This document shows, piece after piece, positions 33,301 through 63,300 of a stretch of 64,000 nucleotides of DNA (position 1 is its first letter; each line of letters begins with the position of its first letter). Made by a program: the position numbers and the translations under genes. The stretch spans positions 34,309,974-34,373,973 of the forward strand of contig NC_069002.1 in NCBI RefSeq assembly GCF_001194135.2, in the 5' to 3' direction. This DNA comes from Octopus bimaculoides (lineage: Eukaryota). Under the pieces are notes generated by a model. The model saw nothing but the letters and a program-made list of their open reading frames with translations. It had not been told where the DNA came from and did no database searches.

Positions 33301-36300
33301 CATACGTTCATACGTTCGTTCGTTGTATCGTTCATTCATTCGTAAGTATTGACGTACGTTCGTTCTTTCGTTCGTACGTACGAAATACGTTCTGTCGTTT
33401 GTTCGTTCGTTCAGTCGGTCATTCGTTCGTTCTTTCGTTCGTTCATGCGTTCGTACTTACGTACGTGCGTACGTTCTTCCGTTCATTGTGCATTCGTACG
33501 TACGTTTGTTCGTTAGTTCGTACGTATGCATATTCATTCGTTCTTTTGTTCGTTCAATCGTTCGTTCTTTCTTTCGTTCGTACGTAATTACGTACGTACA
33601 TAGGTATANNNNNNNNNNGTTCTTTCTTTCGTTCGTACGTAATTACGTACGTACATAGGTATATGCGTTCGTTCGTTCATTCGGAAGTACGTTATTTCTT
33701 TCGTTCTTTCGTTCATTCATACGTACGTACGTTCGGTCGTTCGTTCGTTCGTTTGTTCGTTCATTCGTTGCTACGTACATACGTACGTTTGTTCGTTCGA
33801 TCATCCGTTCGTTAGTTCGATCGTACGTACGTACGTTCTTTCGTAATACGTACGTACATACGTTCGTTCGTACATACGTTCGTCCGTTCGTTAGTTCGTT
33901 CGTTCGTACTTACGTACGTACGTACGTTCGTATGTTCATTCGTATGGACGTACTTAGGTACCTATTCTCGTACATAAGTACGTGCTTACATTCGTTCCTT
34001 CGTTAGTTTTATAGTTCGTTTGTTCCTTCGTCCGTCCGTTCGTTCGTTCGTACGTACGTTCTTTAGTAATACGTATGTACATACGTCCGTACATATGTTC
34101 TTTCCTACGTTCATTTGTACGAATGTACGTACGATCGTTCGTTCGTACGTACGTACATTCGTTCGTTCAATCTTACATTCATTCGTTCGTTCGTTCGTTC
34201 TTTTGTTCGTTCATTCATTCGTTCGTACGTACATACGTTCTTACGTTCGTTTGGTCGTTGGTTCGTTCGTACGTACTTACGTACGTACATACGTTCGTTC
34301 GTTCGTAAGTTCGTCCGTACGTTCGTTCTTTTGTTCGTACGTACGAAAGTACTTTCGTTCGTTCGTTCGGTCGTTCGTACATTTGTTCCTACTCACGTAC
34401 GTGCGTACGTACGTACGTTCGTTTGTTCGTTCATAGTGCATTCGTACGTACGTACGTACGTTCGCACTTTCAGTCGTTTGTTCTTTTGTTCGTTTATTCG
34501 TTCGTTCTTTCGGTCGTACGAAGATACGTTCGCTCGTATGTTCGTACGTACGTTCGTTGTTTCACTCGTTCATTCTTTCGTTCTTTCTTTCTTTGAATCG
34601 TACGTCCCTTCTTTCGTTCGTTCGATAAATCGTCCGTACATACATACGTACGTACGTACTCACGTGTGTGCGTACGTACGTACGTACTTACGTACGTTTA
34701 TTCGTTCTCTCGTCCATCGTACGTACGTTGTTCGTTAGTTCGTTCGTTTATACGTCCGTTAGTTCGTTCGTGAGTACGTACGTAAGTACGTATTTTTCTT
34801 TTGTCTGTTCGTTCGTTGGTTCATTCTTTAGTTAGTTAGTTCATTCGTTTGTACGTACGTACGTATGTACGTTCGTTTGTTCATTCGTACGTAAGTACTT
34901 CGGTACCTATTTACGTAAGTACGTACATTCGTTCGTTCGCTCGTTCGTTCGTTCGTATGTACGTACGTAAGATCGTCCGTTCGTCCGTGCATACTTGTGT
35001 ACGTTCGTTCTTTCGTTCGTTCCTTCCTTCGATCGTTCGAACGTTCGTACATACATACGTACATACGTTCGTTTGTTCATTCGTTCATATGAACGTACGC
35101 ACAAACGTACGTTCGTTTGTTCTTTGGTTCGTTCATGTGCTCCTTCTTACGTACGTACGTTCGTTCGTACGTACGTATGTACGTATGTACGTTCGTTCGT
35201 TCCATCGATTGATTTTTCGTTTTTTCGTTAGTTCGTTCCTTCCTGCCTTCCTTCCTTCCTTCCTACGTACATACGGACGTTTGTTCTTTCGATCATTCAT
35301 TCGACCTTTCGATCGTTCGTATGTACATACGTTCGTTCGTTTGTATGAAAGCACGTACGTTCGCTTGTAACTTCTTTCGTTCGTCGGATCGTTCGTACGT
35401 AGGTTGTTCTTTCGTTCGTACATACGAAAGTACGTTCTTTCTTTCGTTCAATTGGTCGTTCGTACGTACGTTCGTTCTTTCGTTCGTTCGTTCATTTGTT
35501 CGTACTTACGTACGTGCGTACGTTCTTTCTTTCATTGTGCATTCGTACATACGTACATTCATTCGTTCCTTTGTTCGTTCAATCGTTCGTTCTTTCTTCG
35601 GTTCGTACGTAATTACGTACGTACATATGTACGTGCGTTCATACGTTCGTTCGTTCATTCGGAAGTACGTACGTTCGTTCGTTCGTTCATTTCTTCCTAC
35701 TTACGCACGTGCGTACGTACGTACGTTCGTTTGTTCGTTCATTGTGCATTCGTACATACTAACGTACGTTCGTTCTTTCCGTCGATCGTTCGGTCGTTCG
35801 TTCGAATGAAAGTGCGAACGTACGTACGTACGTACGAATGCATAATGAACGAACAAACGAACGTACGTACGTACGCACGTGCGTGCGTAAGTAGGAAGAA
35901 ATGAACGAACGACCAAACGAACGAACGTACGTACTTCCGAATGAACGAACGAACGTACGTACGTACGAATGAACAATCGTACGTACATTCGTACTAATGA
36001 ACGTAAGAACGAACATATGTACGGACGTATGTACATACGTATTACGAAAGAACGTACGTACGAACGAACGAACGGACGGACGAAGGAATGAATAAACGCA
36101 TGCACGAACGAATGATTGAACGAACAAACGTACGTACGTACGAATGTACGAAGGAACAAACAAACGATAAAACTAACGAATGTACGTACGTACGTATGTA
36201 CGTGAATAAGTACCTAAGTACGTACATACGAATGAATATACGAACGTACATACGTACGTAAGTACAAACGAACGAACTAACTAAATAATGAACCAACGAA

Positions 36301-39300: not shown

Positions 39301-42300
39301 AACAAACGAACGAACGAACGACCGTACGTACTTTCGTACCTATGAATGAACGAAAGAACGAAAGAAAGAACGTACTTCCGAATGAGCGAACGAACGCACG
39401 TACATATGTACGTACGTAATTACGTACGAGCGAAAGAAAGAACGAACGATTGAACGAACAAAAGAACGAATGAATAGGCGTACGTACGAACTAACGAACA
39501 AACGTACTTACGTACGTACGAATGCACAATGAACGAACGAACGTACGCACGTACGTAAGTACGAACGAATGAACGAACGAAAGAACGAACGTACGAACGA
39601 ATGACCGACTGAACGAACGAACGAACGAACTTTCATACGTACGAACGAAAGAATGAACGTACGAATGAATGAACGATCCAACGAACGAACGTATGAACGT
39701 ATGTNNNNNNNNNNNNNNNNNNNNNNNNNNNNNNNNNNNNNNNNNNNNNNNNNNNNNNNNNNNNNNNNNNNNNNNNNNNNNNNNNNNNNNNNNNNNNNNN
39801 NNNNAACGAACGAAAGAATGAACGAAAGAAGATACGTACGTACGTACAAACGTACGTGCTTTCGTACGACCGAACGTATGTACGAACGACCGAACGATCG
39901 AAGGAAGGAACGAACGAAAGGACGGACGTACGCAAGTATACACGTACGAACGAACGATCTAACGTCCGTACGCACATATGAACGAACGAGCGAATGCACT
40001 GGCGAACGAACGAACTTCCGTACGCAGATAAATGCGTATGAACGGACGAGCGAGCGAACGAATGTACGTACATACGAATGAACATACGAACGTACATACG
40101 TACTTACGAACCAACGAACTAACCAAAGACTGAGCCAACGAAACAACGAACGGACGAAAGAAAAAACGTACTTACGTACGTAGAAACGAACGAACGTATA
40201 TACGTACGTACGTACGTATGTATGTGCGAACGATTTATCGAACGAACGTCCGAACGTACTTTCGTACGTACTTTCGTACGTATGAACGGAAGATCGAACG
40301 TTCGAACGTACGTACGATCCAACAAACGAACGAAAGAACGAACGAGTGAAACAACGAATGTACGTACATACTTACGAGTGAAGGAACTCACGAACGAACG
40401 TACGTATGTACAAAGGAACGAACAAACGTGCCTATGTACGTAAGTAAGTAGGTACGAACGAAAGAACGATCGTACGACCTTATCTTCGTACGAACGAAAG
40501 AAGGAACGAACGAATAAACGAACAAAAGAACGAACGAATGAAAGTGAGTACGTACGAATGTACAAACGAACGTACGTATGTACGAATGCACAATGAACGA
40601 ACAAACGAAGGTACGGACGTACGCACGCACGTACGTAAGTAGGAACGAATGAACGAACCACCGAAAGAACAACCGAACGAAAGAACGAACGAAAGAAAGA
40701 ACGTATTTCCGTACGAACGAACTTACGAACAAACGTACGTATTTACGAACGAACGAACGTACGTATGTACGAACGAACGTACGTACGTACATAAGTACGT
40801 ACGAACGAACGTACGAACGTATGTACGTACGAATGATAGAAGGAACGAATGATTGAACGAAAAAAAGAACGAACGAACGAACGATTGAACGAAGGAACGT
40901 ACATACGTACGTACGTACGTATGTAAGTACATATGTTTCTTTCGTCCGTTCGTTCGTTGGTTCATTCTTTAGTTAGTTCGTTCGCTTGTACTTACGTACG
41001 TATGTACGTTCGTATGTTCATTCGTATGTACGTACTTAGGTACCTATTCACCTACGTACGTACATTCGTTCCTCCGCTCGTTCTTTCATACGCACTTATC
41101 TACGTGCGTACGTTTGTTCGTTCGCTAGTTGATTTGGTCGTATGTACAGACGTACGTACATACTAACGTACGTTCGTCCTCTCGTTCGTTCCTTCGATCG
41201 TTTGGTCGAATGAAAGTGCGAACGTACGTAAGTGCGAATGCACAATGAACGAACAAACGAACGTACGTACGTACGCACGTGCGTAATATGAACAAATGAA
41301 CGAACGTACTTTCGTACGTACGAACGAAAGAACGAACGTATGTACGAACGAACGAAAGAACGTACTTCCGAATGAACGAACTTACGAACGAACGTACGTA
41401 CATACGTACGTATTTACGAACGAACGAACGTACATACGTACGTAAGTACGTACGAACGAACCAACCAACGATCGAACGAACGTACGAACGTATGTACGTA
41501 CGAACGTATGTACGTACGAACGAATGAATGAANNNNNNNNNNNNNNNNNNNNNNNNNNNNNNNNNNNNNNNNNNNNNNNNNNNNNNNNNNNNNNNNNNNN
41601 NNNNNNNNNNNNNNNNNNNNNNNNNNNNNNNNNNNNNNNNNNNNNNNNNNNNNNNNNNNNNNNNNNNNNNNNNNNNNNNNNNNNNNNNNNNNNNNNNNNN
41701 NNNNNNNNNNNNNNNNNNNNNNNNNNNNNNNNNNNNNNNNNNNNNNNNNNNNNNNNNNNNNNNNNNNNNNNNNNNNNNNNNNNNNNNNNNNNNNNNNNNN
41801 NNNNNNNNNNNNNNNNNNGACGGACGAAGGAATGAACGAACGAATGAACGTATGCATGAACGAATGAATGAACGATTGAACGAACGAACGTACGTACGTA
41901 CGAACGAACAATCGTACAAATGAACGTAAGAACGAACATACGTACGGACGTATGTACATACGTATTACGAATGAACGTACGTACGAACGAACGAACGGAC
42001 GGACGAAGGAATGAACGAACGAATGAACGTATGCATGAACGAATGATTGAACGAACAAACGTACGTACGTACGAACGTACGAAGGAACAACCAACGATAA
42101 AACTAACGAAGAAACGAAGTACGATAATAGGTACCTAAGTAACTACATACGAATGAACATACGAACGTACATACGTACGTAAGTACAGACGAACGAACTG
42201 ACTAAAGAATGAACCAACGAAAGAAAGAAACATATGTACTTAAGTACGGACTTACGAACGAACGTACCAACGAAGGTACGAACGAACGTATGTACGTACG

Positions 42301-45300
42301 TTTAACGAAAGAACGTACGTACATACGATCGAACGAACGAACGGACGAACGAATGATCGAACGAACAAACGTACGTTCGTTCGTAATTACGGACGTAAGT
42401 ACGTATGTTTCTTTCGTCCGTTCTTTCTTTGGCTCATTCTTTAGTTAGTTCGTTCGTTCGTTCGTTCGATCGTTGGTTCGTTCGATCGTTCGTTCGATTG
42501 TTCGTACGTACTTACGTACTTACATACGTACGTTCGTTCTTTCGTTCGTACCTACGAAAGTACTTTCGGTCGATCGTTCGGTCGTTCGTTCATTCGGTTA
42601 TTCGTACGTACGTTCGTTCATTGTGCATTCGTACGTACGTAAGTACGTTTGTTCGTTACTTCGTGTATACGTATATTCATTCGTTCTTTTGTTCGTTCTT
42701 TCTTTCGTTCGCACCTAATTACGCACGTACATAGGTACGTGCGTTCGTAAGTTCGTTCGTTCAATCGGAAGTAAGTTCTTTCTTTCGTCCTCTCGTTCGT
42801 TCCTTCGATCGTTCGGTCGTACGTACGTACGTGCGAATGCACAATGAACGAACAAACGAACGTACATACGTACGCACGTGCGTAATAGGAACAAATGAAC
42901 GAACGAACGGACGAACGAATGATCGAACGAACAAACGTACGTTCGTACGGACGTAAGAACGTATGTTTCTTTCGTCCGTCCTTTCGTTAGTTCTTTCGTT
43001 GGTTCATTCTTTAGTTAGTTCGTTCGTTCGTTTGTTTGTAATTACGTTCATGTGTTCATTCGTATGTACGTACTTAGGTACCTAATCACGTACATACGTA
43101 CGTACGTACGTACGTACGTACGTACGTACATTCGTTCGTTCGTTCGTTCTTTCATACGCACTTATCTACGTGCGTACGTTCGTTCGTTCGTTCGTTCGTT
43201 CGTACGTACGTACGTTTGTTCGTACAATCGTTCATTCATTCGTTCGTTCTTTTGTTCGTTCATTCTTTCGTTCGTACGTTCGTTCGATCGTTGGTTCGTT
43301 CGATCGTTCGTTCGATTGTTCGTACGTACTTACGTAATTACATACGTACGTTCGTTCTTTCGTTCGTACCTACGAAAGTACTTTCGGTCGATCGTTCGGT
43401 CGTTCGTTCATTCGGTCATTCGTACGTACGTTCGTTCTTTCGTTCATTCTTTGTGCATTCGTACGTACGTAAGTACGTTTGTTCGTTATTTCGTGCGTAC
43501 GTATATTCATTCGTTCTTTTCTTCGTTCTTTCTTTCGTTCGCACCTAATTACGCACGTACATAGTTACGTGCATTCGTAATTTCGTTCGTTCAATCGGAA
43601 GTAAGTTCTTTCTTTCGTTCATTCATACGTACGTACGTTCGTTCTTTCGTTCGTACATACGAAAGTACGTTCGGTCGTTTATTCGTTCATTCGATCGAAC
43701 ATACGTACGTTTTTCGTAATACGTACGTACATACGATCGTTCGTACGTTCGTTCGAACATACGTAAGTACGTACGTAAGTACATATGTTTCTTTCGTCCG
43801 TTCGTTCGTTGGTTCATTCTTTAGTTAGTTCGTTCGCTTGTACTTACGTACGTATGTACGTTCGTATGTTCATTCGTATGTACGTACTTAGGTACGTATT
43901 CACCTACGTACCTACATTCGTTCCTTCGCTCGTTCTTTCAAACGCACTTATCTACGTGCGTACGTTTGTTCGTTCGCTAGTTCATTCGGTCGTTTGTTCG
44001 TTCGTATGTACAGACGTACGTACATACTAACGTACGTTCGTCATCTAGTTCGTTCCGTCGATCGTTCGGTCGAATGAAAGTGCGAACGTACGTAAGTGCG
44101 AATGCACAATGAACAAACAAACGAACGTACGTACGTACGCACGTGCGTAATAGGAACAAATGAACGAACGTACTTTCGTACGTACGAACGAAAGAACGAA
44201 CGTACGTACGAACGAACGAAAGAACGTACTTCCGAATCAACGAAATTACGAACGAACGTACGTACATACGTACGTATTTACGAACGAACGAACGAACGTA
44301 CATACGTACGTAAGTACGTACGAACGAACCAACCAACGATCGAACGAACGTACGAACGTATGTACGTACGAACGAATGAATGAACGAACAAAAGAACGAA
44401 CGAACGAATGAATGAACAATTGAACGAACGAACGTACGTACGTACGAACGAATAATCGTACGTACATTCGTACAAATGAACGTAAGAACGAACATACGTA
44501 CGGACGTATGTACATACGTATTACGAATGAACGTACGTACGAACGAACGAACGAAGGAATGAACGAACGAATGAACGTATGCATGAACGAATGATTGAAC
44601 GAACAAACGTACGTACGTACGAACGTACCAAGGAACAACCAACGATAAAACTAACGAAGAAACGAAGTACGTGAATAGGTACCTAAGTAAGTACATACGA
44701 ATGAACATACGAACGTACATACGTACGTAAGTACAGACGAACGAACTAACTAAAGAATGAACCAACGAAAGAAAGAATCATATGTACTTACGTACGTACT
44801 TACGAACGAACGTACCAACGAACGTACGAACGAACGTATGTACGTACGTTTTACGAAAGAACGTACGTACGTACGTACGATCGAACGAACGAATGATCGA
44901 ACGAACAAACGTACGTATGTACGTAGCAACGAATGAACGAACAAACGAACGAACGAACGACCGTACGTACTTTCGTATGTACGAACGATAGAACGAACCT
45001 ACCTATGAATGAACGAAAGAACGAAAGAAAGAACGTACTTCCGAATGAACGAACGAACGCACGTACATATGTACGTACGTAATTAGGTACGAGCGAAAGA
45101 AAGAACGAACGATTGAACGAACAAAAGAACGAGTGAATAGGCGTACGTACGAACTAACGAACAAACGTACTTGCGTACGTACGAATGCACAATGAACGAA
45201 AGAACGTACGCACGTACGTAAGTACGAACGAATGAACGAACGAAAGAACGAATGTACGAACGAATGACCGACTGAACGAACAAACGAACGAACTTTCCTA

Positions 45301-51300: not shown

Positions 51301-54300
51301 CGGACGGACGAAGGAATGAACGAACGAATGAACGAACGAATGAATGTATGCACGAACGAATGATTGAACGAACAAACGTACGTACGTAGGAACAACCAAC
51401 GATAAAACTAACGAAGAAACGAAGTACGTACGTACGTATGTACGTGAATAGGTACCTAAGTAAGTACATACGAATGAACATACGAACGTACATACGTACG
51501 TAAGTACAAACGAACGAACTAACTAAAGAATGAACCAACGAAAGAAAGAAACATATGTACTTACGTACGTACTTACGAACGAACGTACGAACGTATGTAC
51601 GTACGTATTACGAAAGAACGTACGTACGTACGATCGAACAGACGAATGATCGAACGAACAAACGTACTTATGTACGTAGCAACGAATGAACGAACGACCA
51701 TACGTACTTTCGTATGTACGAACGAAAGAACGAACCTACGTATGAATGAACGAATGAACGAAAGAAAGAACGTACTTCCGACTGAACGAACGAACGCACG
51801 TACCTATGTACGTACGTAATTACGTACGAGCGAAAGGAAGAACGAACGATTGAACGAACAAAAGAACAAATGAACAGGCGTACGTACGAACTAACGAACA
51901 AACGTACGTACGAATGCACAATGAACGAAAGAACGTACGCACGTACGTAAGTCCGAACGAATGAACGAACGAAAAAACGAACGTACGGACGAATGACCTA
52001 CTGAACGAACGAACGACCGAACTTTCGTACGTACGAACGAAAGAACGAACGTACGAATGAATGAACGATCCAACGAACGAACGTATGAACGTATGTACAT
52101 ACGTATGAATAAATGAACGAACAAAAGAACGAACAAACGAATGCACGATTGAACGAACGAATGTACGTACGAACGTACTATGTACGTACGTATTACGAAA
52201 GAACGTACGTACGAACGAACGAACGGACGTAGGAATGAACATACGGATGTAGGAACGAACGAAAGAATGAACGATTGAACGAAAGAAGATACATACGTAC
52301 GAACGTACACACGTACGTGCTTGCGTACGAACGAACGTATGTACGTACGTATTAAGAAATAACGTACGTACGAACGAACGAACGGTCGAACGAACAAAGG
52401 TGCGTATGTTTGTAGGAAGGAAGGAAGGAACGAACTAACGAAAGAATGAGTAAACGAAAAATCTATCGATGGAACGAACGTACGTACGTACTTACATACG
52501 TATGTACGTACATACGTATGTACGTACGTACGAACGGCCGAACGAACGTATGTACGTACGTGCGTGCGTAAGAACGAGCGAATGAAAGAACCAAAGAACA
52601 AACGAACGTACGTTTGTGCGAACGTTCATATGTACTGATGAACGAACGAACGAACGTATGTACATACGTATGTACGAACGATCGAAGGAAGGAACGAACG
52701 AAAGAACGAACGTACGCAAGTATACACGTACGAACGAACGATCTTACGTCCGTACGCACATACGAACGAACGAGCGAATGCACTAGCGAACGAACGAACT
52801 AACTAAAGAATGAACCAACGAAAGAACGTAAGAAAAAACGTACTTACGTACGTACTTACGAACGAACCAACGAATGAACTAACGCTCGTATATACGTACG
52901 TAAGTACGAATGAACGAACGAACGGTCGAACAAACGAACGAACATATATACGTACGTAAGTACGTATGTATGTGCGAACGATTTATCGAACGAACGATCG
53001 AACGTACGTACTATCCAACAAACGAACGAAAGAACGAACGAATGTACGTACGTACTTACCAGCGAAGGAACTTACGAACGAACGTACGTATGTACAAAGC
53101 AACGAACGAACGTGCCTATGTACGTAAGTAAGTAGGTACGAACGAAAGAACGATCGAACGAACGTACGAACATATCTTCGTACGAACGAAAGAAAGAACG
53201 AACGAATGAAAGAACAAAAGAATGAAAGAATGAAAGTGCGTACGTACGAACGTACAAACGAACGTACGTACGTACGAATGCACAATGAACGAACAAACGA
53301 ACGTACGTACGTACGAATGAACGAACGAAAGAAAGAAACATAGTACTTCCGAACGCACGAACTTACGAACGAACGTACGTATGTACGAACGAAAGATCGC
53401 ACGAACCAACGAACGTATGTACGTACGAATGAAAGAAGGAACGAATGATTGAACGAAAAATAGAACGAACGACCGAACAATCGACCGAAAGTACTTTCGT
53501 AGGTACGAACGAAAGAACGAACGTACGTATGTCAGTACGTAAGTACGTACGAACAATCGAACGAACGATCGAACGAACCAACGATCGAACGAACGTACGA
53601 ACGAAAGAATGAACGAACAAAAGAACGAACGAATAAATGAACGATTGAACGAACGAACGTACGTACGTACGTACGAACATACGACCGAAAGAACGAACTA
53701 ACTAAAGAATGAACCAACGAAAGAACTAACGAAAGAACGGATGAAAGAAACATATGTACGTACGTCCGTACTTACGAACGAACGAACGGACGAACGAATG
53801 ATCGAACGAACAAACGTACGTTCGTTCGTACGTTCGTTCGTTCGTAAGTACGGACGTAAGTACATATGTTTCCTTCGCCCGTTCTTTCGTTATTTCTTTC
53901 GTTTGTTCATTCTTTAGTTAGTTCGTTCGTTCGTTTGTAATTGCGTTCGTATGTTCTTTCGTATGTACGTACTTAGGTACCTATTCACGTACATACGTAC
54001 GTACGTATGTACATTCGTTCGTTCGTTTGTTCCTTCTTTCATACGCACTTATCTACGTGCGTACGTTCGTTCGTTCGATCGTTCGTTCGTATGTTCGCAC
54101 GTACGTACGTACGTTCGTTCGTTCAATCGTTCATTCATTCGTTCGTACGTACATACGTTCGTACGTTCGTTCGATCGTTGGTTCGATTGTTCGTACGTAC
54201 TTACGTACGAACGAACGAACGTACGTACGTACGTAGTTCGTTCGTTCGGTCGGTCGTTCGTTTGGTCGTTCGTTCATTCGTACGTACGTTCGTTCATTGT

Positions 54301-57300
54301 GCATTCGTAAGTACGTAAGTAATTTTGTTCGTACGTACGCATATTCATTCGTTCTTTTTTTCGTTCAATCTTTCGTTCTTTCTTTCGTTCGTACGTAATG
54401 ACGTACGTGCATAGTTACGTGCGTTCGTAAGTTCGTTCTTTCGTTCGTACATACGAAAGTACGTTCGGTCGTTCGTTCGTTCGTTTGTTCCTACGTACAT
54501 ACGTACGTTTGTTCGTTCGATCATTCGTTCGTATGTTCCTTCGTATGTACGTCATTATGTACCTATTCACCTACATACGTACGTTCGCTCGTTCTTTCAT
54601 ACGCACTTATCTACGTGCGTACGTTCGTTCGTTCGCTAGTTCATTCGTTCGTTTGTTCGTTCGTATGTACGTACGTACGTACGTAACATCGTTCGTTCGT
54701 ACGCACATACTAACGTACGTTCGTCCTTTCGTTCGTTCCTTCGATCGTTCGGTCGTTCGTTCGTATGTTCGTACGTACTTACGTTCGTTCGTTCAATCGT
54801 TCATTCATTCGTTCGTTCGTTCGTTCTTTTGTTCGTTCATTCATTCGTTCTTTCTTTCGTTCGTACGTACATACGTTTGTACGATCGTTCGATTGTTCGT
54901 ACGTAATTACTTTCGTACTTACGTACGTACATACCTACGTTCGTTTTTTCGTTCGTACGTTCGTTCATTGTGCATTCGTACGTACGTACGTTCGTTTGTA
55001 CGTACGGGCGCACTTTCATTCGTTCGTTCTATCGTTCGTTCATACGAAGGTACGTTCGTACGTTCGTNNNNNNNNNNNNNNNNNNNNNNNNNNNNNNNNN
55101 NNNNNNNNNNNNNNNNNNNNNNNNNNNNNNNNNNNNNNNNNNNNNNNNNNNNNNNNNNNNNNNNNNNNNNNNNNNNNNNNNNNNNNNNNNNNNNNNNNNN
55201 NNNNNNNNNNNNNNNNNNNNNNNNNNNNNNNNNNNNNNNNNNNNNNNNNNNNNNNNNNNNNNNNNNNNNNNNNNNNNNNNNNNNNNNNNNNNNNNNNNNN
55301 NNNNNNNNNNNNNNNNNNNNNNNNNNNNNNNNNNNNNNNNNNNNNNNNNNNNNNNNNNNNNNNNNNNNNNNNNNNNNNNNNNNNNNNNNNNNNNNNNNNN
55401 NNNNNNNNNNNNNNNNNNNNNNNNNNNNNNNNNNNNNNNNNNNNNNNNNNNNNNNNNNNNNNNNNNNNNNNNNNNNNNNNNNNNNNNNNNNNNNNNNNNN
55501 NNNNNNNNNNNNNNNNNNNNNNNNNNNNNNNNNNNNNNNNNNNNNNNNNNNNNNNNNNNNNNNNNNNNNNNNNNNNNNNNNNNNNNNNNNNNNNNNNNNN
55601 NNNNNNNNNNNNNNNNNNNNNNNNNNNNNNNNNNNNNNNNNNNNNNNNNNNNNNNNNNNNNNNNNNNNNNNNNNNNNNNNNNNNNNNNNNNNNNNNNNNN
55701 NNNNNNNNNNNNNNNNNNNNNNNNNNNNNNNNNNNNNNNNNNNNNNNNNNNNNNNNNNNNNNNNNNNNNNNNNNNNNNNNNNNNNNNNNNNNNNNNNNNN
55801 NNNNNNNNNNNNNNNNNNNNNNNNNNNNNNNNNNNNNNNNNNNNNNNNNNNNNNNNNNNNNNNNNNNNNNNNNNNNNNNNNNNNNNNNNNNNNNNNNNNN
55901 NNNNNNNNNNNNNNNNNNNNNNNNNNNNNNNNNNNNNNNNNNNNNNNNNNNNNNNNNNNNNNNNNNNNNNNNNNNNNNNNNNNNNNNNNNNNNNNNNNNN
56001 NNNNNNNNNNNNNNNNNNTCGATTGTTCGTACGTAATTACTTTCGTACTTACGTACGTACATACCTACGTTCGTTTTTTCGTTCGTACGTTCGTTCATTG
56101 TGCATTCGTACGTACGTAAGTACGTTTGTTCGTTAGTTCGTACGTATGCATATTCATTCGTTCTTTTGTTCGTTCAATCGTTCGTTCTTTCTTTCGTTCG
56201 TACGTAATTACGTACGTACATAGGTACATGCGTTCGTTCGTTCATTCGGAAGTACGTTATTTCTTTCGTTCTTTCGTTCATTCATACGTACACACGTTCG
56301 TTCTTTCGTTCGTACATACGAAAGTACGTTCGGTCGTTCGTTCGTTCGTTCGTTTGTTCGTTCATTCGTTGCTACGTACATACGTACGTTTGTTCGTTCG
56401 ATCATCCGTTCGTTAGTTCGATCGTACGTACGTACGTTCTTTAGTAATACGTACGTACATACGTTCGTTCGTACCTTCGTACGTACGTAGGTACATATGT
56501 TACTTTCGTCCGTTCGTTCGTTAGTTCTTTCGTTAGTTTATTCTTTAGTTATTTCGTTCGTTTGTACTTACGTACGTATGTAGGTTCGTATGTTCATTCG
56601 TATGTACGTACTTAGGTACCTATTCACGTACATACGTTCGTACGTACATTCGTTCGTTCAATCGTGCATTCGTTCGTTCGTTCGTTCGTACGTACGTTCG
56701 TTCGTTTTTTCGTTCTTTTGTTCGTTCATTTATTCATTCGTATGTATATACGTTCATACGTTCGTTCGTTGTAGCGTTCATTTATTCGTAAGTACGTACG
56801 TACGTTCGTTCTTTCATTCGTACGTACGAAATACGTTCTGTCGTTCGTTCGTTCGTTCAGTCGGTCATTCGTACGTACGTTCGTTCTTTCGTTCGTTCAT
56901 TCGTTCGTACTTACGTACGTTCTTTCGTTCATTGTGCATTCGTACGTACGTAAGTACGTTTGTTCGTTAGTTCGTACGTATGCATATTCATTCGTTCTTT
57001 TGTTCGTTCAATCGTTCGTTCTTTCTTTCGTTCGTACGTAATTACGTACGTATATAGGTACATCCGTTCGTTCGTTCATTCGGAAGTACGTTATTTCTTT
57101 CGTTCTTTCGTTCATTCATACGTACGCTCGTTCGTTCTTTCGTTCGTACATACGAAAGTACGTTCGGTCGTTCGTTCGTTCGTTCGTTTGTTCGTTCAAT
57201 CGTTGCTACGTACATACGTACGTTTGTTCGTTCGATCATCCGTTCGTTAGTTCGATCGTACGTACGTACGTTCTTTAGTAATACGTACGTACATACGTTC

Positions 57301-60300
57301 GTTCGTACGTTCGTACGTACGTAGGTACATATGTTACTTTCGTCCATTCGTTCGTTAGTTCTTTCGTTGGTTTATTCTTTAGTTATTTCGTTCGTTTGTA
57401 CTTACGTACGTATGTACGTTCGTATGTTCATTCGTATGGACGTACTTAGGTACCTATTCACGTACATAAGTACGTGCGTACATTCGTTCCTTCGTTAGTT
57501 TTATCGTTCGTTTGTTCCTTCGTCCGTCCGTTCGTTCGTTCGTACGTACGTTCTTTAGTAATACGTATGCACATACGTCCGTACATATGTTCGTTCCTAC
57601 GTTCATTTGTACGAATGTACGTACGATCGTTCGTTCGTACGTGCGTACGTTCGTTCGTTCAATCGTTCATTCATTCGTTCGTTCGTTCGATCTTTTGTTC
57701 GTTCATTCGTTCGTACGTACATACGTTCGTACGTTCGTTTGATCGTTGGTTGTTTCGTTCGTACCTACTTACGTACGTACATACGTTCGTTCGTTTGTAA
57801 GTTCGTCCGTTCGTTCGTTCGTTCGTTCGTTCGTACGTACTTCGTTCTTTTGTCCGTACGTACGAAAGTACTTTCGTTCGTTCGTTCGGTCGTTCGTACA
57901 TTTGTTCCTACTTACGTACGTGCGTACGTACGTACGTTCGTTTGTTCGTTCATTGTGCATTCGTACGTACGTACGTTCGCACTTTCATTCGTGTGTTCTT
58001 TTGTTCGTTTATTCGTTTGTTCTTTCGGTCGTACGAAGATACGTTCATTCGTTCCTTTGTACATACGCACGTATGTACGTACGTTCGTTCGTATGTTCGT
58101 ACGTATGTTCGTTGTTTCACTCGTTCATTCTTTCGTTCTTTCTTTCTTTGAATCGTACGTAGGTTCGAACGTCCCTCCTTTCGTTCGTTCGATAAATCGT
58201 TCGTACATACGTACGTACGTACGTACGTATGTTCGTTTGTACGTACGTACTCACGTACGTGCGTACGTGTGTGCGTTCGTACGTACGTACTCACGTGTGT
58301 GCGTACGTACGTACGTACTCACGTGTGTGCGTACTTACGTACGTACTCACGTGTGTGCGTACTTACGTACGTACTCACGTGTGTGCGTACTTACGTACGT
58401 ACTCACGTGTGTGCGTACTTACGTACGTACTCACGTGTGTGCGTACTTACGTACGTACTCACGTGTGTGCGTACTTACGTACGTACTCACGTGTGTGCGT
58501 ACTTACGTACGTACTCACGTGTGTGCGTACTTACGTACGTACGTACTCACGTGTGTGCGTACTTACGTACGTACGTACTCACGTACGTACGTACTCACGT
58601 GTGTGCGTACTTACGTACGTACTAACGTATGTGCGTACGTACGTACGTACGTACATTCGTTCATTCGCTCGTTCGTTCGTTCGTATGTACGTACGTAAGA
58701 GCGTCCGTTCGTCCGTGCATACTTGTATACGTTCGTCCTTTCGTTCGTTCCTTCCTTCGATCGTTCGAACGTTCGTACATACTTACGTACATACGTTCGT
58801 TTGTTCATTCGTTCATATGAACGTACGCACAAACATACGTTCGTTTGTTCTTTGGTTCGTTCATTTGCTCGTTCTTACGTACGTACGTTCGTTCGTACGT
58901 ACGTATGTACGTACATAAGTATGTACGTACGTACGTTCGTTCGTTCCATCGATAGATTTTTCGTTTACTCGTCTTTTCGTTAGTTCGTTCCTTCCTTCCT
59001 TCCTACGTACATACGGACGGTTGTTCTTTCGATCACTCGTTCGACCTTTCGTTCGTTCGTACGTACGTACGTTCTTTCGTAATACGTATGTACATACGTT
59101 CGATCGTTTGTACGTACGAACGTACGTAACTTCTTTCGTTCAATCTTTCATTCTTTCGTTCGTTCCTACGTACGTACGTTCATTCCTTCGTCCGTCCGTT
59201 CCTTCGTTCGTACGTTCTTTCGTAATACGTATGTACATACGTTCTTTCGTACGTTCTTTTGTACGAACGTTCGTTCGTTTGTTCGTTCATTTATTCATTC
59301 GTTCTTTCTTTTGTTTATATTTACAAACGACCGTACGTTCGTTCGGTCGTCCGTTCGTTCGTTCGTACATACATACATACGAGGTACATACGTTCGTACG
59401 TTCGTTCTGGCGTTCGTTCATTCGTTCGTACTTACGTCATTGTGCATTCGTACATACGTACGTACGTTTGTTCGTTAGTTAGTTCGTTCGTACGTACGCG
59501 CTTTCATTCGTTCTTTTGTTCGTTCAATCGTTCATTCTTTCTTTGGTTCGTACGTAATTACGTACGTACATAGGTACGTGCGTTCATAAGTTCGTTCGTT
59601 CATTCGGAAGTGCGTTCGTTCTTTCGTTCGTACATACGAAAGTACGTATGTTCGTTCGTTCCTACGTACATACGTACGTTTGTTCGTTCGATCATTCGTT
59701 CATTCGTTCGTTCTTTCATTCGTACGTACATACGTTCGTACGTTCATTCGATCGTTGGTTCGTTCGATCGTTCGTTCGTACGTACATACGTACTTCGTTC
59801 GTTCGTCCATACGTAGTTCGTTCGTTCGGAAGTACGTTCTCTCTTTCGTTCGATCATTCGTACGTACGTACGTACGTTCTCTCTTTCGTTCGATCATTCG
59901 TACGTACGTACGTACGTTCTTTCGGTTGTTCGTTCGGTGGTTCGTTCATTCGTTCCTACTTACGTACGTCCGTGCGTGCGTACGTACGTTCGTTTGTTCG
60001 TTCATTGTGCATTCGTACGTACGTACATTCGTTCGTTCGCTCGTTCATACGCACGTATCTACGCGCGTTCGTTCGTTCGTTGGTATGTACGTACGTACGT
60101 AACATCGTTCGTTCGTAAGTACATACTAACGTACGTTCGTCCTTTCCTTCGATCGTTCGGTCGTTCGTTCGAATGAAGGTACGAACGTACGTACGTACGA
60201 ATGCACAATGAACGAACAAACGAACGAACGAATGCATGATTGAACGAACGAATGTACGTACATACGAACAAACGTACGTACTTTCGTACAAACGAACGTA

Positions 60301-63300
60301 CGAACGAACGTATGAACGTACGTACGTACGTACGTATTACGAAAGAACGTACGTACGAACGAACGAACGGACGAAGAAATGAACGTACGTATGTAGGAAC
60401 GAACGAAAGAATGAACGATTGAACGAAAGAAGATACGTACGTACGTACGAACGTACAAACGTACGTGCTTTCGTACGAACGAACGTTATGTACGTACGTA
60501 TTACGAAAGAACGTACGAACGAACGAACGAACGGTCGAACGAACAAAGGTACGTATGTACGTAGGAAGGAAGGAACGAACGAACTAACGAAAAAACGAGT
60601 GAACGAAAAATTTGTCGATGGAATGAACGAACGTATGTACGTACATACTTATGTACGTACGTACGAACGACCGACCGAACGAACGTACGTACGTACGTAA
60701 GAACGAGCGAATGAACGAACGTACGTTTGTGCGTACGTTCATATGTGCTGATGAACGAACGAACGAACGTATGCACGTACATATGTACGAACGACCGAAC
60801 GATCGAAGGAAGGAACGAACGAAAGGACGAACGTACGCACGTATACACGTACGAACGAACGATCTTACGTCCGTACGCACTTATGAACGAACGAGCGAAT
60901 GGACTAGCGAACGAACGAACGTCCGTCCGTAGATAAATGCGTATGAACGGATGATCGAGCGAACGAATGTACGTACATACGAATGAACATACGAACGTAC
61001 ATACGTACGTACGAACGAACGAACTAACTAAAGACGAGAGAACGAAAGAACCTACGTACGTGCAAACGAACGAACGTATATACGTACGTACTTACGAGCG
61101 AAGGAACTCACGAACGAACGAACTGACGAAAGAAAAAACGTACTTACGTACGTACTTACGAAAGAACGAATGAACTAACGCACGTATATACGTACGTATG
61201 TACGAATGAACGAACGAACGGTCGAACGAACGAACGTAGGAACGTACGTTCGTACATATGAACGAACGAACTAACGAACGACATATGTACGTACGTACGA
61301 TGGACGAGAGAACGAAAGAACCTACGTACGTGCAAACGAACGAACGTATATACGTACGTACTTACGAGCGAAGGAACTCACGAACGAACGTACGTATGTA
61401 CAAAGGAACGAACGAACGTGCCTATGTACGTAAGTAAGTAGCTACGAACAAAAGAACGATGGTACGAACATATCTTCGTACGAACGAAAGAAAGAACGAA
61501 CGAATGAACGAACAAAAGAACGAACGAATGAAAGTGCGTACGTACGAACGTACAAACGAACGTACGTACGTACGAATGCACAATGAACGAAGAAACGAAC
61601 GTACGTACGTGCGCACGCACGTACGTAAGTAGGAACGAATGAACGAACCAACGAAAGAACAACCGAACGAAAGAACGAACGAAAGAAAGAAAGTATTTCC
61701 GACCGAACAAACGTACGTATTTACGAACGAACGAACGTACTATGTACGAACGAACGTACGTACGTACGTAAGTACGTACGAACGAACGTATGTACGTACG
61801 AACGAACGTATGTACGTACGAACGAACGTATGTACGTACGAATGAAAGAATGAACGAATGATTGAACGAAAAAAAGAACGAACGAACGAACGATTGAACG
61901 AAGGAACGTACATACGGACGTACGAACATACGACCGAACGAACGAATATACGTACGTATGTACGTGTTTAGGTACCTAAGTACGTACACGCGAATGAACA
62001 TACGGATGTAAGTACAAACGAACGAACGAACGAACTAACTAAAGAATGAACCAACGAAAGAACTAACGAAAGAACGGACGAAAGAAACATATGTACTTAC
62101 GTCCGTACTGACGAACGAACGAACGTATGTACGATCGAACGAACGAACGGACGAACGTACGTTCGTTCGTTCGTAAGTACGGACGTAAGTACATATGTTT
62201 CTTTCGTCCGTTCTTTCGTTAGTTCTTTCGTTGGTTCATTCTTTAGTTAGTTCGTTCGTTCGTTTGTAATTACGTTTATGTGTTCATTCGTATTTACGTA
62301 CTTAGGTACTTAATCACGTACATATGAAAGTACGTTCGGTCGATTGTTCGTTCATTCGTTCCTACGTACATACGTACGTTTGTTCGTTCGATCATTCGTT
62401 CGTTTGATCGTACGTACGTTCTTTCGTAATACGTACGTACATACGATCGTTCGTACGTTCGTTCGTACATACGTAAGTACGTACGTAATTACATATGTTT
62501 CTTTCGTCCGTTCGTTCGTTGGTTCATTATTTATGTACTTAGGTACTTATTCACGTACGTACGTAAGAACGAACAATCGTACGTACATTCGTACAAATGA
62601 ACGTAAGAACGAACATACGTACGGACGTATGTACATACGTATTACGAAAGAACGTACGTACGAACGAACGAACGGACGGACGAAGGAATGAACGGACGAA
62701 TGAACGTATGCACGAACGAATGATTGAACGAACAAACGTACGTACGTACGAACGTACGAAGGAACAACCAACGATCAAACTAACGAAGGAACGAAGTACG
62801 TACGTACGTACGTACGTATGTACGTGAATAGGAACCTAAGTTAGTACATACGAATGAACATACGAACGTACATACGTACGTAAGTACAAACGAACGAACT
62901 AACTAAAGAATGAACCAACGAAAGAACTAACGAACGAACGGACGAAAGAAACATATGTACTTACGTACGTACTTACGAACGAACGTACCAACGAACGTTC
63001 GAACGAACGTATGTACGTACGTTTTACGAAAGAACGTACGTACGTACGATCGAGCGAGCGAACGAATGATCGAACGAACAAACGTACGTATGTACGTAGG
63101 AACGAATGAACGAAAAACGAACGAACGAACTTTCTTATGAACTTTCGTATGTACGAACGAAAGAACGAACTTACGTATGAATGAACGAAAGAACGAAAGA
63201 AAGATCGTACTTCCGAATGAACGAACGAACGCACGTACCTATGTACGTACGTAATTACGTAGAGCGAAAGGAAGAACGAACGATTGAACGAACAAAAGAA

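What the first reader, a model, noticed from the sequence alone, without database searches (positions are those of the whole stretch)
35801..62565. About 19 strand-polarity switches, mostly at self-complementary words, reusing only 2-3 junction types
The array alternates between TTCG-rich and CGAA-rich blocks. Switches lie at about 35803 (TTCGAA), 37064, 37145, 38246 (ACATATGT), 38525 (TCGA), 40932 (ACATATGT), 41207 (TCGA), 42372 (AACGTACGTT), 42825, 42938 (AACGTACGTT), 44071 (TCGA), 47097, 47812 (TCGTACGTACGA), 50396 (CGAACGTTCG), 50852 (TCGTACGTACGA), 53817 (AACGTACGTT), 60170 (TTCGAA), 62158 (CGAACGTACGTTCG) and 62557. The junction GATCGTT(C/T)GGTCG followed by AATGAAAG or similar recurs eight times, and the same ~280-bp cassette appears at 38243-38527, 40929-41209 and 43781-44073. 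Inference: a few ancient template switches at palindromic words were then amplified as part of the higher-order unit. That is unusual, since most satellites are head-to-tail.
Basis: partly seen in the sequence, partly recalled or inferred. Interest (0 to 1): 0.72.

Follow-up and report, generated by a model that had tools for sequence, protein, structure and literature searches.

The report
Satellite array with repeated orientation flips
A tandem-repeat array of at least 34 kb, built from 4-base units (CGAA and CGTA), changes strand orientation 19 times, but the flips go back to only a few old inversion junctions that were copied along with a ~3-kb repeat unit, a pattern already described in beetle and human satellites.

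Summary
They separate blocks with AT skew of +0.38 to +0.49 or -0.38 to -0.50. None lies at an assembly gap.

The array (30319 to the window end) is a degenerate tetranucleotide satellite. CGAA makes up 48% and CGTA 37% of the CG-containing units, and 96% of CG-to-CG spacings are multiples of 4. It has a nested ~3-kb higher-order period.

The 19 switches fall into seven junction families: A (8 copies), B (6 copies), C1, C2, D, E and F. C1, C2 and F look like deletion derivatives of B or A. Diverged copies that are homologous on both sides show that A and B each arose once and were then amplified.

B, one copy of A, and D sit at the centres of imperfect palindromes (arms 104-292 bp, 78-92% identical). 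That fits fold-back or inverted-duplication events.

The "palindromic words" are weak evidence. Any in-frame join of CGTT, CGTA and CGAA units produces them, and family-level enrichment is marginal (P 0.03-0.11).

Reads could not be checked. This is a new member of a known kind.

The parts
30319..64000 (.). Whole satellite array: degenerate 4-bp units (CGAA 48%, CGTA 37% of CG-units). It starts right after a (TA)n tract and runs off the window end.
30319..35803 (-). Long minus-polarity block (TTCG-rich), 5.5 kb, no internal switch. It holds un-inverted versions of both A flanks.
35804..38246 (+). Plus block of unit U1, interrupted by the 94-bp inverted insert 37045-37138 and the false 10-N gap.
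38247..38525 (-). Inverted ~280-bp cassette, copy 1.
38526..40932 (+). Plus block of unit U2. Its 100-N gap is consistent with 99 bp in the paralog.
40933..41207 (-). Inverted ~280-bp cassette, copy 2.
41208..42372 (+). Plus block of unit U3. It contains the 286-N gap, whose content is unknown.
42373..42824 (-). Minus block, 452 bp.
42825..42950 (+). Very short plus block (126 bp) between an A variant and a B junction. It looks like a unit with most of its plus part deleted.
42951..44071 (-). Minus block, 1.1 kb. Its last ~290 bp are cassette copy 3 (43781-44073, no switch at its left end).
44072..47098 (+). Plus block of unit U5 (3027 bp), used as the reference unit.
47099..47812 (-). Minus block of U5, 714 bp.
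47813..50396 (+). Plus block of unit U6.
50397..50852 (-). Minus block of U6, 456 bp.
50853..53817 (+). Plus block of unit U7.
53818..60170 (-). Long minus block, 6.35 kb as written. It includes the 951-N gap and a 28-bp minisatellite. Its far part mirrors U7 (50855-52738 with 57992-56042, 77%).
60171..62158 (+). Plus block of unit U8, paralog of U1 at an offset of ~23.4 kb.
62159..62558 (-). Minus block, 400 bp.
62559..64000 (+). Plus block that runs off the window.
35784..35821 (.). Junction A (minus to plus), copy 1: GATCGTTCGGTCG ttcgttcg AATGAAAGTGCGAACGT.
38514..38543 (.). Junction A, copy 2 (0-bp linker).
41196..41225 (.). Junction A, copy 3 (0-bp linker, T variant).
42807..42850 (.). 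Junction A, copy 4. This variant lacks AATGAAAGTGCGAACGT and joins through (TACG)n to GCGAATGCACAATG.
44060..44089 (.). Junction A, copy 5 (0-bp linker).
47797..47834 (.). Junction A, copy 6 (linker tacgtacg).
50837..50874 (.). Junction A, copy 7 (linker tacgtacg).
60151..60188 (.). Junction A, copy 8 (linker ttcgttcg, AATGAAGG).
42351..42382 (.). Junction B (plus to minus), copy 1: GAATGATCGAACGAACAAACGT|ACGTTCGTTCG.
42917..42950 (.). Junction B, copy 2.
47075..47122 (.). Junction B, copy 3.
50373..50420 (.). Junction B, copy 4.
53796..53843 (.). Junction B, copy 5.
62127..62175 (.). Junction B, copy 6. It lacks the GAATGATCGAACGAACAAACG stretch, and 16 bp at its centre form a perfect palindrome.
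38226..38260 (.). Junction C1. The plus block is truncated at U5 position ~2450 and joined to the cassette start (..GAAC|ATAAGTACATATG..).
40895..40940 (.). Junction C2. The plus block is truncated at U5 position ~2755 and joined to the same cassette. A 26-bp perfect palindrome is centred at 40912/40913.
37027..37151 (.). Junctions D (~37044) and E (~37138). They bound an inverted copy (92% identical) of the upstream 36906-37009, followed by a re-copy of 37027-37060. Four paralogs lack this insert. It ends 40-50 bp before the 10-N gap.
62545..62572 (.). Junction F. The minus side is at U5 position ~3362 and the plus side at ~362, as a ~740-bp deletion across an A junction would leave.
35632..35967 (.). 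Imperfect palindrome around A copy 1: arms 148 and 160 bp, 87% identical, 28-bp spacer.
46850..47289 (.). Imperfect palindrome around B copy 3: arms 169 and 182 bp, 87% identical, 89-bp spacer.
50129..50595 (.). Imperfect palindrome around B copy 4: arms ~188 bp, 85% identical, 89-bp spacer.
53535..54112 (.). Imperfect palindrome around B copy 5: arms 264 and 292 bp, 78% identical, 22-bp spacer.
61881..62404 (.). Imperfect palindrome around B copy 6: arms 246 bp, 87% identical, 32-bp spacer. The inner 368 nt fold as one hairpin (-175.7 kcal/mol, z = -27.6).
33609..33618 (.). 10-N gap flanked by an exact 45-bp duplicate: an unmerged overlap, so the sequence is continuous.
37191..37200 (.). 10-N gap flanked by an exact 50-bp duplicate: an unmerged overlap, so the sequence is continuous.
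39705..39804 (.). 100-N gap. The paralog predicts 99 bp missing. Plus polarity on both sides.
41533..41818 (.). 286-N gap. The paralog predicts almost nothing missing, so the content is unknown. Plus polarity on both sides.
55068..56018 (.). 951-N gap of unknown content. Minus polarity on both sides.

Best explanation
This is a real, non-coding satellite array that grew out of a compound tetranucleotide repeat. CGAA is strand-asymmetric and CGTA is its own reverse complement. The array is organised in nested sub-repeats (~0.8-1.3 kb) and a ~3-kb higher-order period.

A very small number of founding rearrangements put repeat material in inverted orientation. There are at least two: a minus-to-plus junction (A) and a plus-to-minus junction (B). 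They were most likely fold-back or inverted-duplication events, that is, hairpin-primed synthesis or a replication template switch. The evidence for this is that the sequence on one side of B, of A copy 1 and of D is the mirror image of the other side, across a short spacer of 22-89 bp.

Unequal crossing-over and segmental duplication then copied the unit [plus block - B - short minus block - A] several times. They also copied a ~5-kb piece that spans A.

Later changes produced the junction variants and the derived junctions C1, C2 and F:
- 4-bp-unit slippage at the junction centres,
- deletions that cross a junction,
- exchange between units.

Shown: the switches, the junction families, the amplification and the mirrored arms.
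Inferred: the fold-back mechanism, the order of events, and any role of the CGTA tracts.
For: 1. 19 switches between strongly skewed blocks.
2. A 4-bp frame: 96% of CG-to-CG spacings are multiples of 4, and CGAA plus CGTA make 85% of CG-units.
3. A copies (8) and B copies (6) are homologous on both sides of the junction. They differ at the centre only by indels of 8, 16 or 24 bp, which are whole 4-bp units.
4. All A copies share the derived right flank GTGCGAACGT plus a short linker. Non-junction paralogs carry GTGCGTACGT plus ~24 extra bp. The same variant occurs un-inverted in minus blocks at 31476, 34458 and 57973.
5. Direct repeats of 89-97% identity run through the switches.
6. Minus blocks are true reverse-complement copies of complex plus-block sequence. 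Examples: 42449-42591 with 53605-53463 (97.9%), 39336-39539 with 56291-56088 (96%), 43177-43409 with 53695-53463 (95.3%).
7. Mirrored arms: 78-87% identical over 169-292 bp at four B copies, 87% over 148 and 160 bp at A copy 1, and 92% over 104 bp at D. The B palindrome folds at z = -27.6.
8. C1 and C2 share the B right arm but have different plus-side ends. F joins U5 positions ~3362 and ~362.
9. No switch sits at a scaffold gap.
Against: - No independent copy was found in metagenome contigs.
- Left-flank and right-flank similarity matrices of the junction copies do not agree (Mantel r 0.03 and -0.14). Simple co-amplification is therefore not the whole story, and exchange or conversion between units must be added.
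- A and B could not be shown to be the two ends of one event. The un-inverted neighbour of the A right flank is not the B left flank.
- Mirrored arms can also arise from a two-ended inversion in a tandem array, so they do not prove a fold-back.
- D/E is a single copy next to a contig end.
Confidence: 0.65

Rival explanations
1. Assembly or library artefact. The switches are mis-joins or chimeric palindromic reads (missed adapters, amplification chimeras, wrong exits from self-complementary ACGT tracts), not genomic structure.
For: - The window comes from a gapped, scaffolded assembly with unmerged overlaps: exact 45-, 50- and 106-bp duplicates around short N runs.
- The D/E insert ends 40-50 bp before such a gap and is absent from four paralogs.
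- No reads could be examined.
Against: - Arms of the palindromes are only 78-92% identical. A read-through or chimera artefact would give near-identical arms.
- The same A and B junctions were assembled 8 and 6 times in copies that differ by 1-24% in their flanks. Random chimeras do not do that.
- No switch coincides with a gap.
- The self-complementary words at the junctions (4-16 bp; 26 bp at 40912) are shorter than most assembly k-mer sizes.
- The contig on the right of the 37191 gap starts 11 bp inside the inverted insert, so junction E appears in both contigs.
Confidence: 0.1
2. Recurrent inversion at a hot spot. The copies of A and of B arose independently many times because CGTA tracts are both direct and inverted repeats of each other, so recombination or hairpin formation keeps flipping segments at the same sites.
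For: - Four or five of the seven junction families lie in or next to (ACGT)n tracts, which cover 19% of the array.
- Left and right flanks of the junction copies give discordant similarity patterns.
- A copies carry three different linkers: none, ttcgttcg and tacgtacg.
Against: - All copies of a family share the same flanking sequence for at least 30-100 bp on both sides. A copies also share derived markers that non-junction paralogs lack.
- High-identity direct repeats of 600-900 bp run through the junctions.
- The linker differences are whole 4-bp units, as slippage would give.
- Enrichment at self-complementary words is marginal once copies are collapsed to families (P 0.03-0.11).
Confidence: 0.12
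3. One classical two-ended inversion, or a few, each creating an A-type and a B-type junction at once. The cause would be breakage and rejoining or recombination between CGTA tracts, with no extra inverted copy made, followed by amplification.
For: - A and B strictly alternate within the ~3-kb units.
- Both keep the 4-bp frame.
- In a tandem array, an inversion whose length is near a multiple of the period also gives mirrored arms.
Against: - The un-inverted neighbour of the A right flank does not match the B left arm.
- The un-inverted continuation of the B left flank (TACGTATGTACGTAGCAACG...) is not found, reversed, at the A end of the minus blocks.
- Plus blocks are already about one full period long (2.4-3.0 kb against a period of 2.98 kb in the minus block). 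The short minus blocks therefore look like added material.
Confidence: 0.12
4. No rearrangement at all. Polarity blocks arose in place, by point mutation of symmetric CGTA units to CGAA or CGTT, followed by local slippage expansion.
For: - CGTA is one substitution away from both CGAA and CGTT in the same frame.
- Most switches keep the frame.
Against: Minus blocks match plus blocks as reverse complements at 90-98% identity over 140-800 bp of complex sequence, against a background of ~70%.
Confidence: 0.01

Closest known systems
Macro-dyad symmetries of Tribolium satellites (TmSat1/TmSat2 in T. madens; also T. castaneum and T. freemani), PMC13081366
   Same: - Satellite arrays change monomer orientation and form kb-scale inverted sub-arrays.
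- Only a few inversion-site types exist (INV_1a and INV_1b in TmSat1, INV_2 in TmSat2), and these are repeated many times.
- The inverted pieces sit in cassette-like units.
- Long hairpins are predicted at the inversion sites.
   Different: - Tribolium monomers are ~110-bp-derived units. Here the basic unit is 4 bp, with a ~3-kb higher-order period.
- Tribolium inversion sites are 98-99% conserved over thousands of copies and were confirmed on HiFi reads. Here the copies are 76-99% alike, number only 6-8 in one window, and are unconfirmed by reads.
- Genome-wide extent and chromosomal position are unknown here.
Inversion breakpoints (strand switches) in human HSat3B5, beta satellite and divergent alpha satellite, T2T-CHM13 (bioRxiv 10.1101/2021.07.12.452052)
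   Same: Simple-sequence-derived or complex satellites with very many orientation switches inside one array. The switches are common in older, diverged arrays rather than in homogeneous ones.
   Different: Different sequence families and organism. That paper does not report whether the human breakpoints fall into a few amplified junction types with mirrored arms, and this was not examined here.
Fold-back inversions / inverted duplications (hairpin-capped break intermediates, breakage-fusion-bridge junctions, replication template switching such as FoSTeS/MMBIR). Named from general knowledge of the field, not from a paper read here.
   Same: - Head-to-head mirrored arms separated by a short asymmetric spacer (22-89 bp).
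- Junctions lie in or near short self-complementary sequence.
- D/E has the a-b-c-rc(b)-c-d layout expected from two successive template switches, with an ACC microhomology at the return switch.
   Different: Those junctions are usually seen fresh, with identical arms, in tumours, patients or experimental systems. Here the arms are 8-22% diverged and the event can no longer be reconstructed base by base.

Membership tests
Satellite DNA with higher-order repeat organisation | Long head-to-tail tandem repetition of a basic unit | tested here: met
   TRF finds period-4 arrays over the whole of 30362-63645 with 63-73% matches and 1-3% indels. 96% of CG spacings are multiples of 4.
Satellite DNA with higher-order repeat organisation | Copies one higher-order period apart are much more alike than neighbouring basic units | tested here: met
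   Matches of 89-97% identity at offsets of ~2.4-3.8 kb and ~23.4 kb, against a ~70% background.
Satellite DNA with higher-order repeat organisation | Non-coding, no known RNA family | tested here: inconclusive
   No Rfam family reaches its gathering score in the window. The ORFs listed at the left edge of the array are FVRS-type artefacts of the 4-bp period. The ORF scan covered only 1-30300; no ORF, protein or expression test was run on the array interior.
Macro-dyad-symmetry satellites (Tribolium type) | Sub-arrays of opposite orientation, kb in length, within one array | tested here: met
   20 blocks of 94 bp to 6.35 kb. The far part of the 53818-60170 block mirrors unit U7.
Macro-dyad-symmetry satellites (Tribolium type) | A few inversion-site types, each highly conserved (98-99% in Tribolium) | tested here: inconclusive
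   Few types: met (A with 8 copies, B with 6). High conservation: not met. The 150-bp flanks are 76-99% identical and the centres vary by 8-24-bp indels.
Macro-dyad-symmetry satellites (Tribolium type) | Organisation confirmed on raw long reads and present genome-wide in (peri)centromeric regions | not testable with these tools
Organism and chromosome position are unknown.
Fold-back inversion / inverted duplication junction | Sequence on one side of the junction is the reverse complement of the other side | tested here: met
   Met for B at 47098, 50396, 53817 and 62158, for A at 35803 and for D at 37044. Weak or absent at the other A copies, where the minus block is a different cassette.
Fold-back inversion / inverted duplication junction | Short non-mirrored spacer between the arms | tested here: met
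   Spacers of 22, 28, 32, 38, 89 and 89 bp.
Fold-back inversion / inverted duplication junction | The inverted arm is an extra copy (a duplication), not a relocated segment | tested here: inconclusive
   Plus blocks are about one full period long, and the mirrored plus-strand sequence is retained next to B. Paralogy inside the array prevents a clean test.
Fold-back inversion / inverted duplication junction | Microhomology or a short inverted repeat at the breakpoint beyond chance | tested here: inconclusive
   Family-level P is 0.03-0.08 against random synthetic junctions and 0.11 against in-frame ones.
Chimeric-read or mis-assembly palindrome | Arms (nearly) identical | tested here: not met
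   Arms are 78-92% identical.
Chimeric-read or mis-assembly palindrome | Junctions unique, or located at contig ends or gaps | tested here: not met
   A occurs 8 times and B 6 times in diverged copies. No switch is at a gap. Only D/E lies within ~50 bp of a contig end.
Pure tetranucleotide microsatellite | High purity of a single 1-6-bp motif | tested here: not met
   Only 63-73% matches to any 4-bp consensus. There are two main units plus many variants, and a kb-scale higher-order structure.

The most novel reading that the evidence does not exclude
The self-complementary CGTA tracts embedded in the asymmetric CGAA repeat may act as built-in, frame-preserving flip sites. A 3' end that stops in a CGTA run can snap back on itself or pair with any other CGTA run in either orientation. 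A satellite of this composition would then be intrinsically prone to fold-back duplication and would build macro-dyad symmetries by itself. If so, it would give a sequence-level rule for which satellites become orientation-switching arrays.
Probability: 0.2. Interest if true: 0.5.

Novelty: new member of a known kind. Interest (0 to 1): 0.3.

Why it matters
Orientation switches inside satellites create long inverted repeats. These can form hairpins or cruciforms, stall replication, break chromosomes and, as proposed for beetle centromeres, shape centromeric chromatin.

This array is a compact example in which the history can still be read: few founding junctions, amplification with the higher-order unit, then slippage and junction-crossing deletions.

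It also gives a caution for scans of this kind. In a repeat whose unit is nearly self-complementary, palindromic words at switch points come for free and should not be taken as evidence of mechanism.

Tried and rejected
- Independent copies. Exact-pattern scans of metagenome contigs for the A junction and for a conserved array motif found nothing.
- Organism identity. Rfam found nothing. The only protein-like ORF in the flank (28102-28605), which I read as a retrotransposon tail, has only unnamed metagenomic relatives. The contig of its closest relative is a 707-bp metagenome scaffold. Literature searches for the motif gave nothing relevant.
- Co-amplification test.
- One-inversion test. Searching for the un-inverted neighbour of the A right flank showed it is not the B left arm. 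I could not show that A and B are the two ends of one event.
- In-place origin. The idea that polarity blocks arose without rearrangement is rejected because of the 90-98% reverse-complement matches.
- Gaps 41533 and 55068. Their flanks do not overlap, so these gaps remain open.

Full report
WHAT IS THERE

From position 30319, directly after a (TA)n tract, to the end of the window, the sequence is one tandem array. Tandem Repeats Finder reports period 4 throughout, with only 63-73% matches but just 1-3% indels. Of the spacings between successive CG dinucleotides, 96% are multiples of four.

Read in the CG frame and in plus orientation:
- 48% of CG-containing units are CGAA and 37% are CGTA.
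- The commonest units that have lost the CG are TGAA, AGAA, TGTA, CAAA and CATA.

CGAA is strand-asymmetric; its complement in the same frame reads CGTT. CGTA is its own reverse complement. Perfect (ACGT)n tracts of 8 bp or more cover 19% of the array and carry no polarity.

Above the 4-bp level the array is not simple. High-stringency self-comparison shows sub-repeats of about 0.8-1.3 kb and a higher-order period near 3 kb. Copies are 89-97% identical, against a background of about 70%.

THE OBSERVATION

Extrema of the cumulative A-minus-T curve give the same 19 switch points at prominence 9 and 12: 35803, ~37044, ~37138, 38246, 38525, 40932, 41207, 42372, 42824, ~42950, 44071, 47098, 47812, 50396, 50852, 53817, 60170, 62158 and 62558.
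- The 20 blocks have AT skew of -0.38 to -0.50 or +0.38 to +0.49.
- The eightfold recurrence of GATCGTT(C/T)GGTCG...AATGAAAG is confirmed.
- The three copies of the ~280-bp cassette are confirmed.

GAPS (the check asked for first)

No gap coincides with a switch; polarity is the same on both sides of each.

| Gap | Finding |
|---|---|
| 33609-33618 (10 N) | Flanked by an exact 45-bp duplicate: unmerged contig overlap, sequence continuous with one redundant copy |
| 37191-37200 (10 N) | Flanked by an exact 50-bp duplicate: same conclusion |
| 39705-39804 (100 N) | Fits the 99 bp that paralog 45368-45466 has between the flanks |
| 41533-41818 (286 N) | The paralog predicts almost nothing missing (41532 corresponds to U5 position 330 and 41858 to 332), but the flanks do not overlap. 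Size and content uncertain |
| 55068-56018 (951 N) | Unresolved; hidden switches inside cannot be excluded |

JUNCTION FAMILIES

The nine minus-to-plus switches comprise eight copies of one junction, A, plus E at 37138. (F at 62558, also minus-to-plus, is treated below.) The A copies align on both sides.
- The right flank is conserved in all of them: AATGAAAGTGCGAACGT...GCGAATGCACAATGAACGAACAAACG.
- The left flank shares at least the last ~34 bp in all copies, then splits into sub-families.
- Copies differ at the centre by a linker of 0 or 8 bp (ttcgttcg or tacgtacg), which is two whole units.
- Un-inverted versions of both flanks exist elsewhere. In minus blocks, the reverse complement of the right flank is preceded (in plus-strand sense) by ...GAACAAAAGAA(C/T)(G/A)AACG at 31476, 34458 and 57973. 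The left flank continues as ...GGTCGTTCGTTCGTATG at 54743.
- All A copies carry a right-flank variant that differs from the non-junction paralogs in plus blocks, which have GTGCGTACGT plus ~24 extra bp. This marks them as one lineage.

Six plus-to-minus switches are copies of junction B.
- Five of the six share the left flank GAACGAACGAACGGACGAACGAATGATCGAACGAACAAACG.
- All six share the right flank GTACGGACGTAAGTAC(G/A)TATGTTTCTTTCGTCCGTTC....
- The centres differ by 8-, 16- or 24-bp indels.

The remaining junctions:
- C1 (38246) and C2 (40932) use the same inverted cassette, which is homologous to the B right arm. They have different plus-side ends, at U5 positions ~2450 and ~2755. C2 more likely lies in the 26-bp perfect palindrome centred at 40912/40913.
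- F (62558) joins U5 positions ~3362 and ~362. That is what a ~740-bp deletion across an A junction would leave.
- D and E (37044, 37138) bound an inverted copy, 92% identical, of the sequence just upstream. It is followed by a second copy of the 34 bp that preceded it (layout a-b-c-rc(b)-c-d). Four paralogous units lack this insert.

AMPLIFICATION

Direct repeats run straight through the switches:
- 46474-47381 with 49772-50660 (94.8%, through B),
- 47590-48270 with 50642-51286 (91%, through A),
- 40908-41506 with 43760-44374 (94.6%),
- a collinear ~5-kb duplication 33207-38236 with 56653-61600 (86-96%) through A at 35803 and 60170.

The history is not a clean tree, however. The similarity matrices of the left and right flanks of the junction copies do not agree (Mantel r 0.03 for A and -0.14 for B). 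That requires exchange or conversion between units, or deletions within the minus blocks.

INVERSION, NOT IN-PLACE DRIFT

Minus blocks match plus blocks as reverse complements at 90-98% identity over 140-800 bp. Examples: 42449-42591 with 53605-53463 (97.9%), and 44667-45444 with 57465-56669 (88%). This excludes the idea that polarity arose by mutation of CGTA to CGAA or CGTT in place.

MIRRORED ARMS

Aligning the left flank of each switch with the reverse complement of its right flank gives strong palindromes at six switches.

| Switch | Family | Arm length (bp) | Identity | Spacer (bp) |
|---|---|---|---|---|
| 47098 | B | 169 / 182 | 87% | 89 |
| 50396 | B | ~188 | 85% | 89 |
| 53817 | B | 264 / 292 | 78% | 22 |
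| 62158 | B | 246 | 87% | 32 |
| 35803 | A | 148 / 160 | 87% | 28 |
| 37044 | D | 104 | 92% | 38 |

The 368 nt around 62158 fold into a single hairpin of -175.7 kcal/mol (z = -27.6).

Head-to-head mirrored arms with a short spacer are the anatomy of fold-back or inverted-duplication junctions. D/E has the layout of two successive template switches, with an ACC microhomology at the return. This is the basis for preferring a fold-back or template-switch origin.

The preference is only moderate. A two-ended inversion whose length is close to a multiple of the repeat period would also give mirrored arms.

I could not show that A and B are the two ends of one inversion. The un-inverted neighbour of the A right flank is not the B left arm. 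The plus blocks are already about one period long, 2.4-3.0 kb against 2.98 kb, so the short minus blocks look like added material.

THE PALINDROMIC WORDS

In this frame, an in-frame join gives:
- ...CGAA CGTA CGTT... spells AACGTACGTT,
- ...CGAA CGTT... spells GAACGTTC,
- ...CGTT CGAA... spells TTCGAA,
- ...CGTT CGTA CGTA CGAA... spells TCGTACGTACGA.

They follow from joining the two orientations in frame and carry no further information.

The frame is kept at A, B, C1 and D and lost at C2, E and F. That is four of seven families, where one in four is expected by chance.

| Comparison | Observed mean half-length | Null mean | P |
|---|---|---|---|
| 19 switches vs random array positions and synthetic random-breakpoint junctions | 4.5 | 2.4-3.2 | about 0-0.012 |
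| Seven families vs synthetic junctions | 4.7 | 2.8-3.4 | 0.03-0.08 |
| Four in-frame families vs in-frame synthetic junctions | 5.0 | 3.4 | 0.11 |

REAL OR ARTEFACT

Reads could not be consulted, and no independent copy was found in metagenome contigs. The internal evidence favours reality for A and B:
- The same junction was assembled 8 and 6 times in copies whose flanks differ by 1-24%.
- Palindrome arms are 8-22% diverged, whereas read-through chimeras give identical arms.
- No switch is at a gap.
- The self-complementary words are short.

D/E is a single copy that ends 40-50 bp before a contig end. The next contig starts 11 bp inside the insert, which is weak support. It needs read confirmation most.

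COMPARISON WITH WHAT IS KNOWN

Orientation switching inside satellites is documented.
- The human T2T study counted more than 200 inversion breakpoints in the chr9 HSat3B5 array and in beta satellite arrays. It found inversions to be common in diverged alpha satellite (bioRxiv 10.1101/2021.07.12.452052).
- The closest match is the macro-dyad symmetry of Tribolium satellites. There, sub-arrays of opposite orientation meet at only two predominant, highly conserved inversion-site types in TmSat1 and one in TmSat2. The minor satellite sits in cassettes (PMC13081366).

The present array shares the few-junction-types and cassette logic. It differs in three ways: its basic unit is 4 bp, its junction copies are much less homogeneous, and its genome-wide extent and position are unknown. 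I therefore file it as a new member of a known kind.

The one idea that goes beyond the known is that CGTA tracts act as seamless flip sites. The data neither support nor exclude it; I put its probability at about 0.2.

VERDICT

- Observation: confirmed.
- Interpretation: partly supported. Few old events plus amplification: yes. Template switch: plausible but unproven. Palindromic words as evidence: no. "Unusual": overstated.
- Interest: 0.3.

Noticed in passing
window 30319-64000 versus 1-30000: The array is extremely CpG-dense: 14.6 CpG per 100 bp, observed/expected 3.2. The flank has observed/expected 0.93. Half of the in-frame units that lost their CG start with TG or CA (transition products), and AGAA, AGTA and GGAA make up much of the rest.
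   Followed up: partly
window 58246-58654: A locally homogenised 28-bp minisatellite (about 14 copies, 87-94% identical in self-comparison, unit close to CGTACTTACGTACGTACTCACGTGTGTG). It is built from seven 4-bp units and nested in the long minus block. It is nearly polarity-neutral.
   Followed up: partly
window 28843-28871, 33609-33618, 37191-37200: Short N runs flanked by exact duplicates of 106, 45 and 50 bp. These are unmerged contig overlaps, so the assembly carries small false duplications at these places.
   Followed up: yes
window 7654-7829, 8802-8878, 11848-12682, 25901-26891: The larger gaps in the flank all sit inside (TA)n or TA-rich microsatellites. The flank is rich in (TA)n and (TG)n tracts.
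   Followed up: no
window 28102-28605 (+): A 167-aa ORF that I read as the C-terminal tail of a non-LTR retrotransposon protein (motif LGLYSLERRRERY...). It has 94 relatives (best 58-70% identity), almost all unnamed and mostly from metagenome assemblies. They gave no clue to the organism.
   Followed up: partly
window 29700-29782 and 29990-30050: Two similar stretches (..atgtccccct..cggttca(c/t)ctacactc..) seen by eye. A tRNA-like motif (ggtttcgatctc) lies between them at about 29888-29899. This may be a SINE-like repeat next to the array border.
   Followed up: no
window 37263-37295, 40255-40283, 45788-45864, 48956-48988, 60720-60752: Micro-switches of 20-75 bp of opposite polarity inside plus blocks. 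In the four units aligned they fall on a shared motif (CGTACGTTTGTGCGTACGTTCATATGTAC), which suggests they are old parts of the unit rather than separate events. They lie below the prominence threshold used for the 19 switches.
   Followed up: partly
window 38577-38683: A 43-bp tandem duplication (2.5 copies, 95% identical) just right of junction A copy 2, not present in the other A copies.
   Followed up: no
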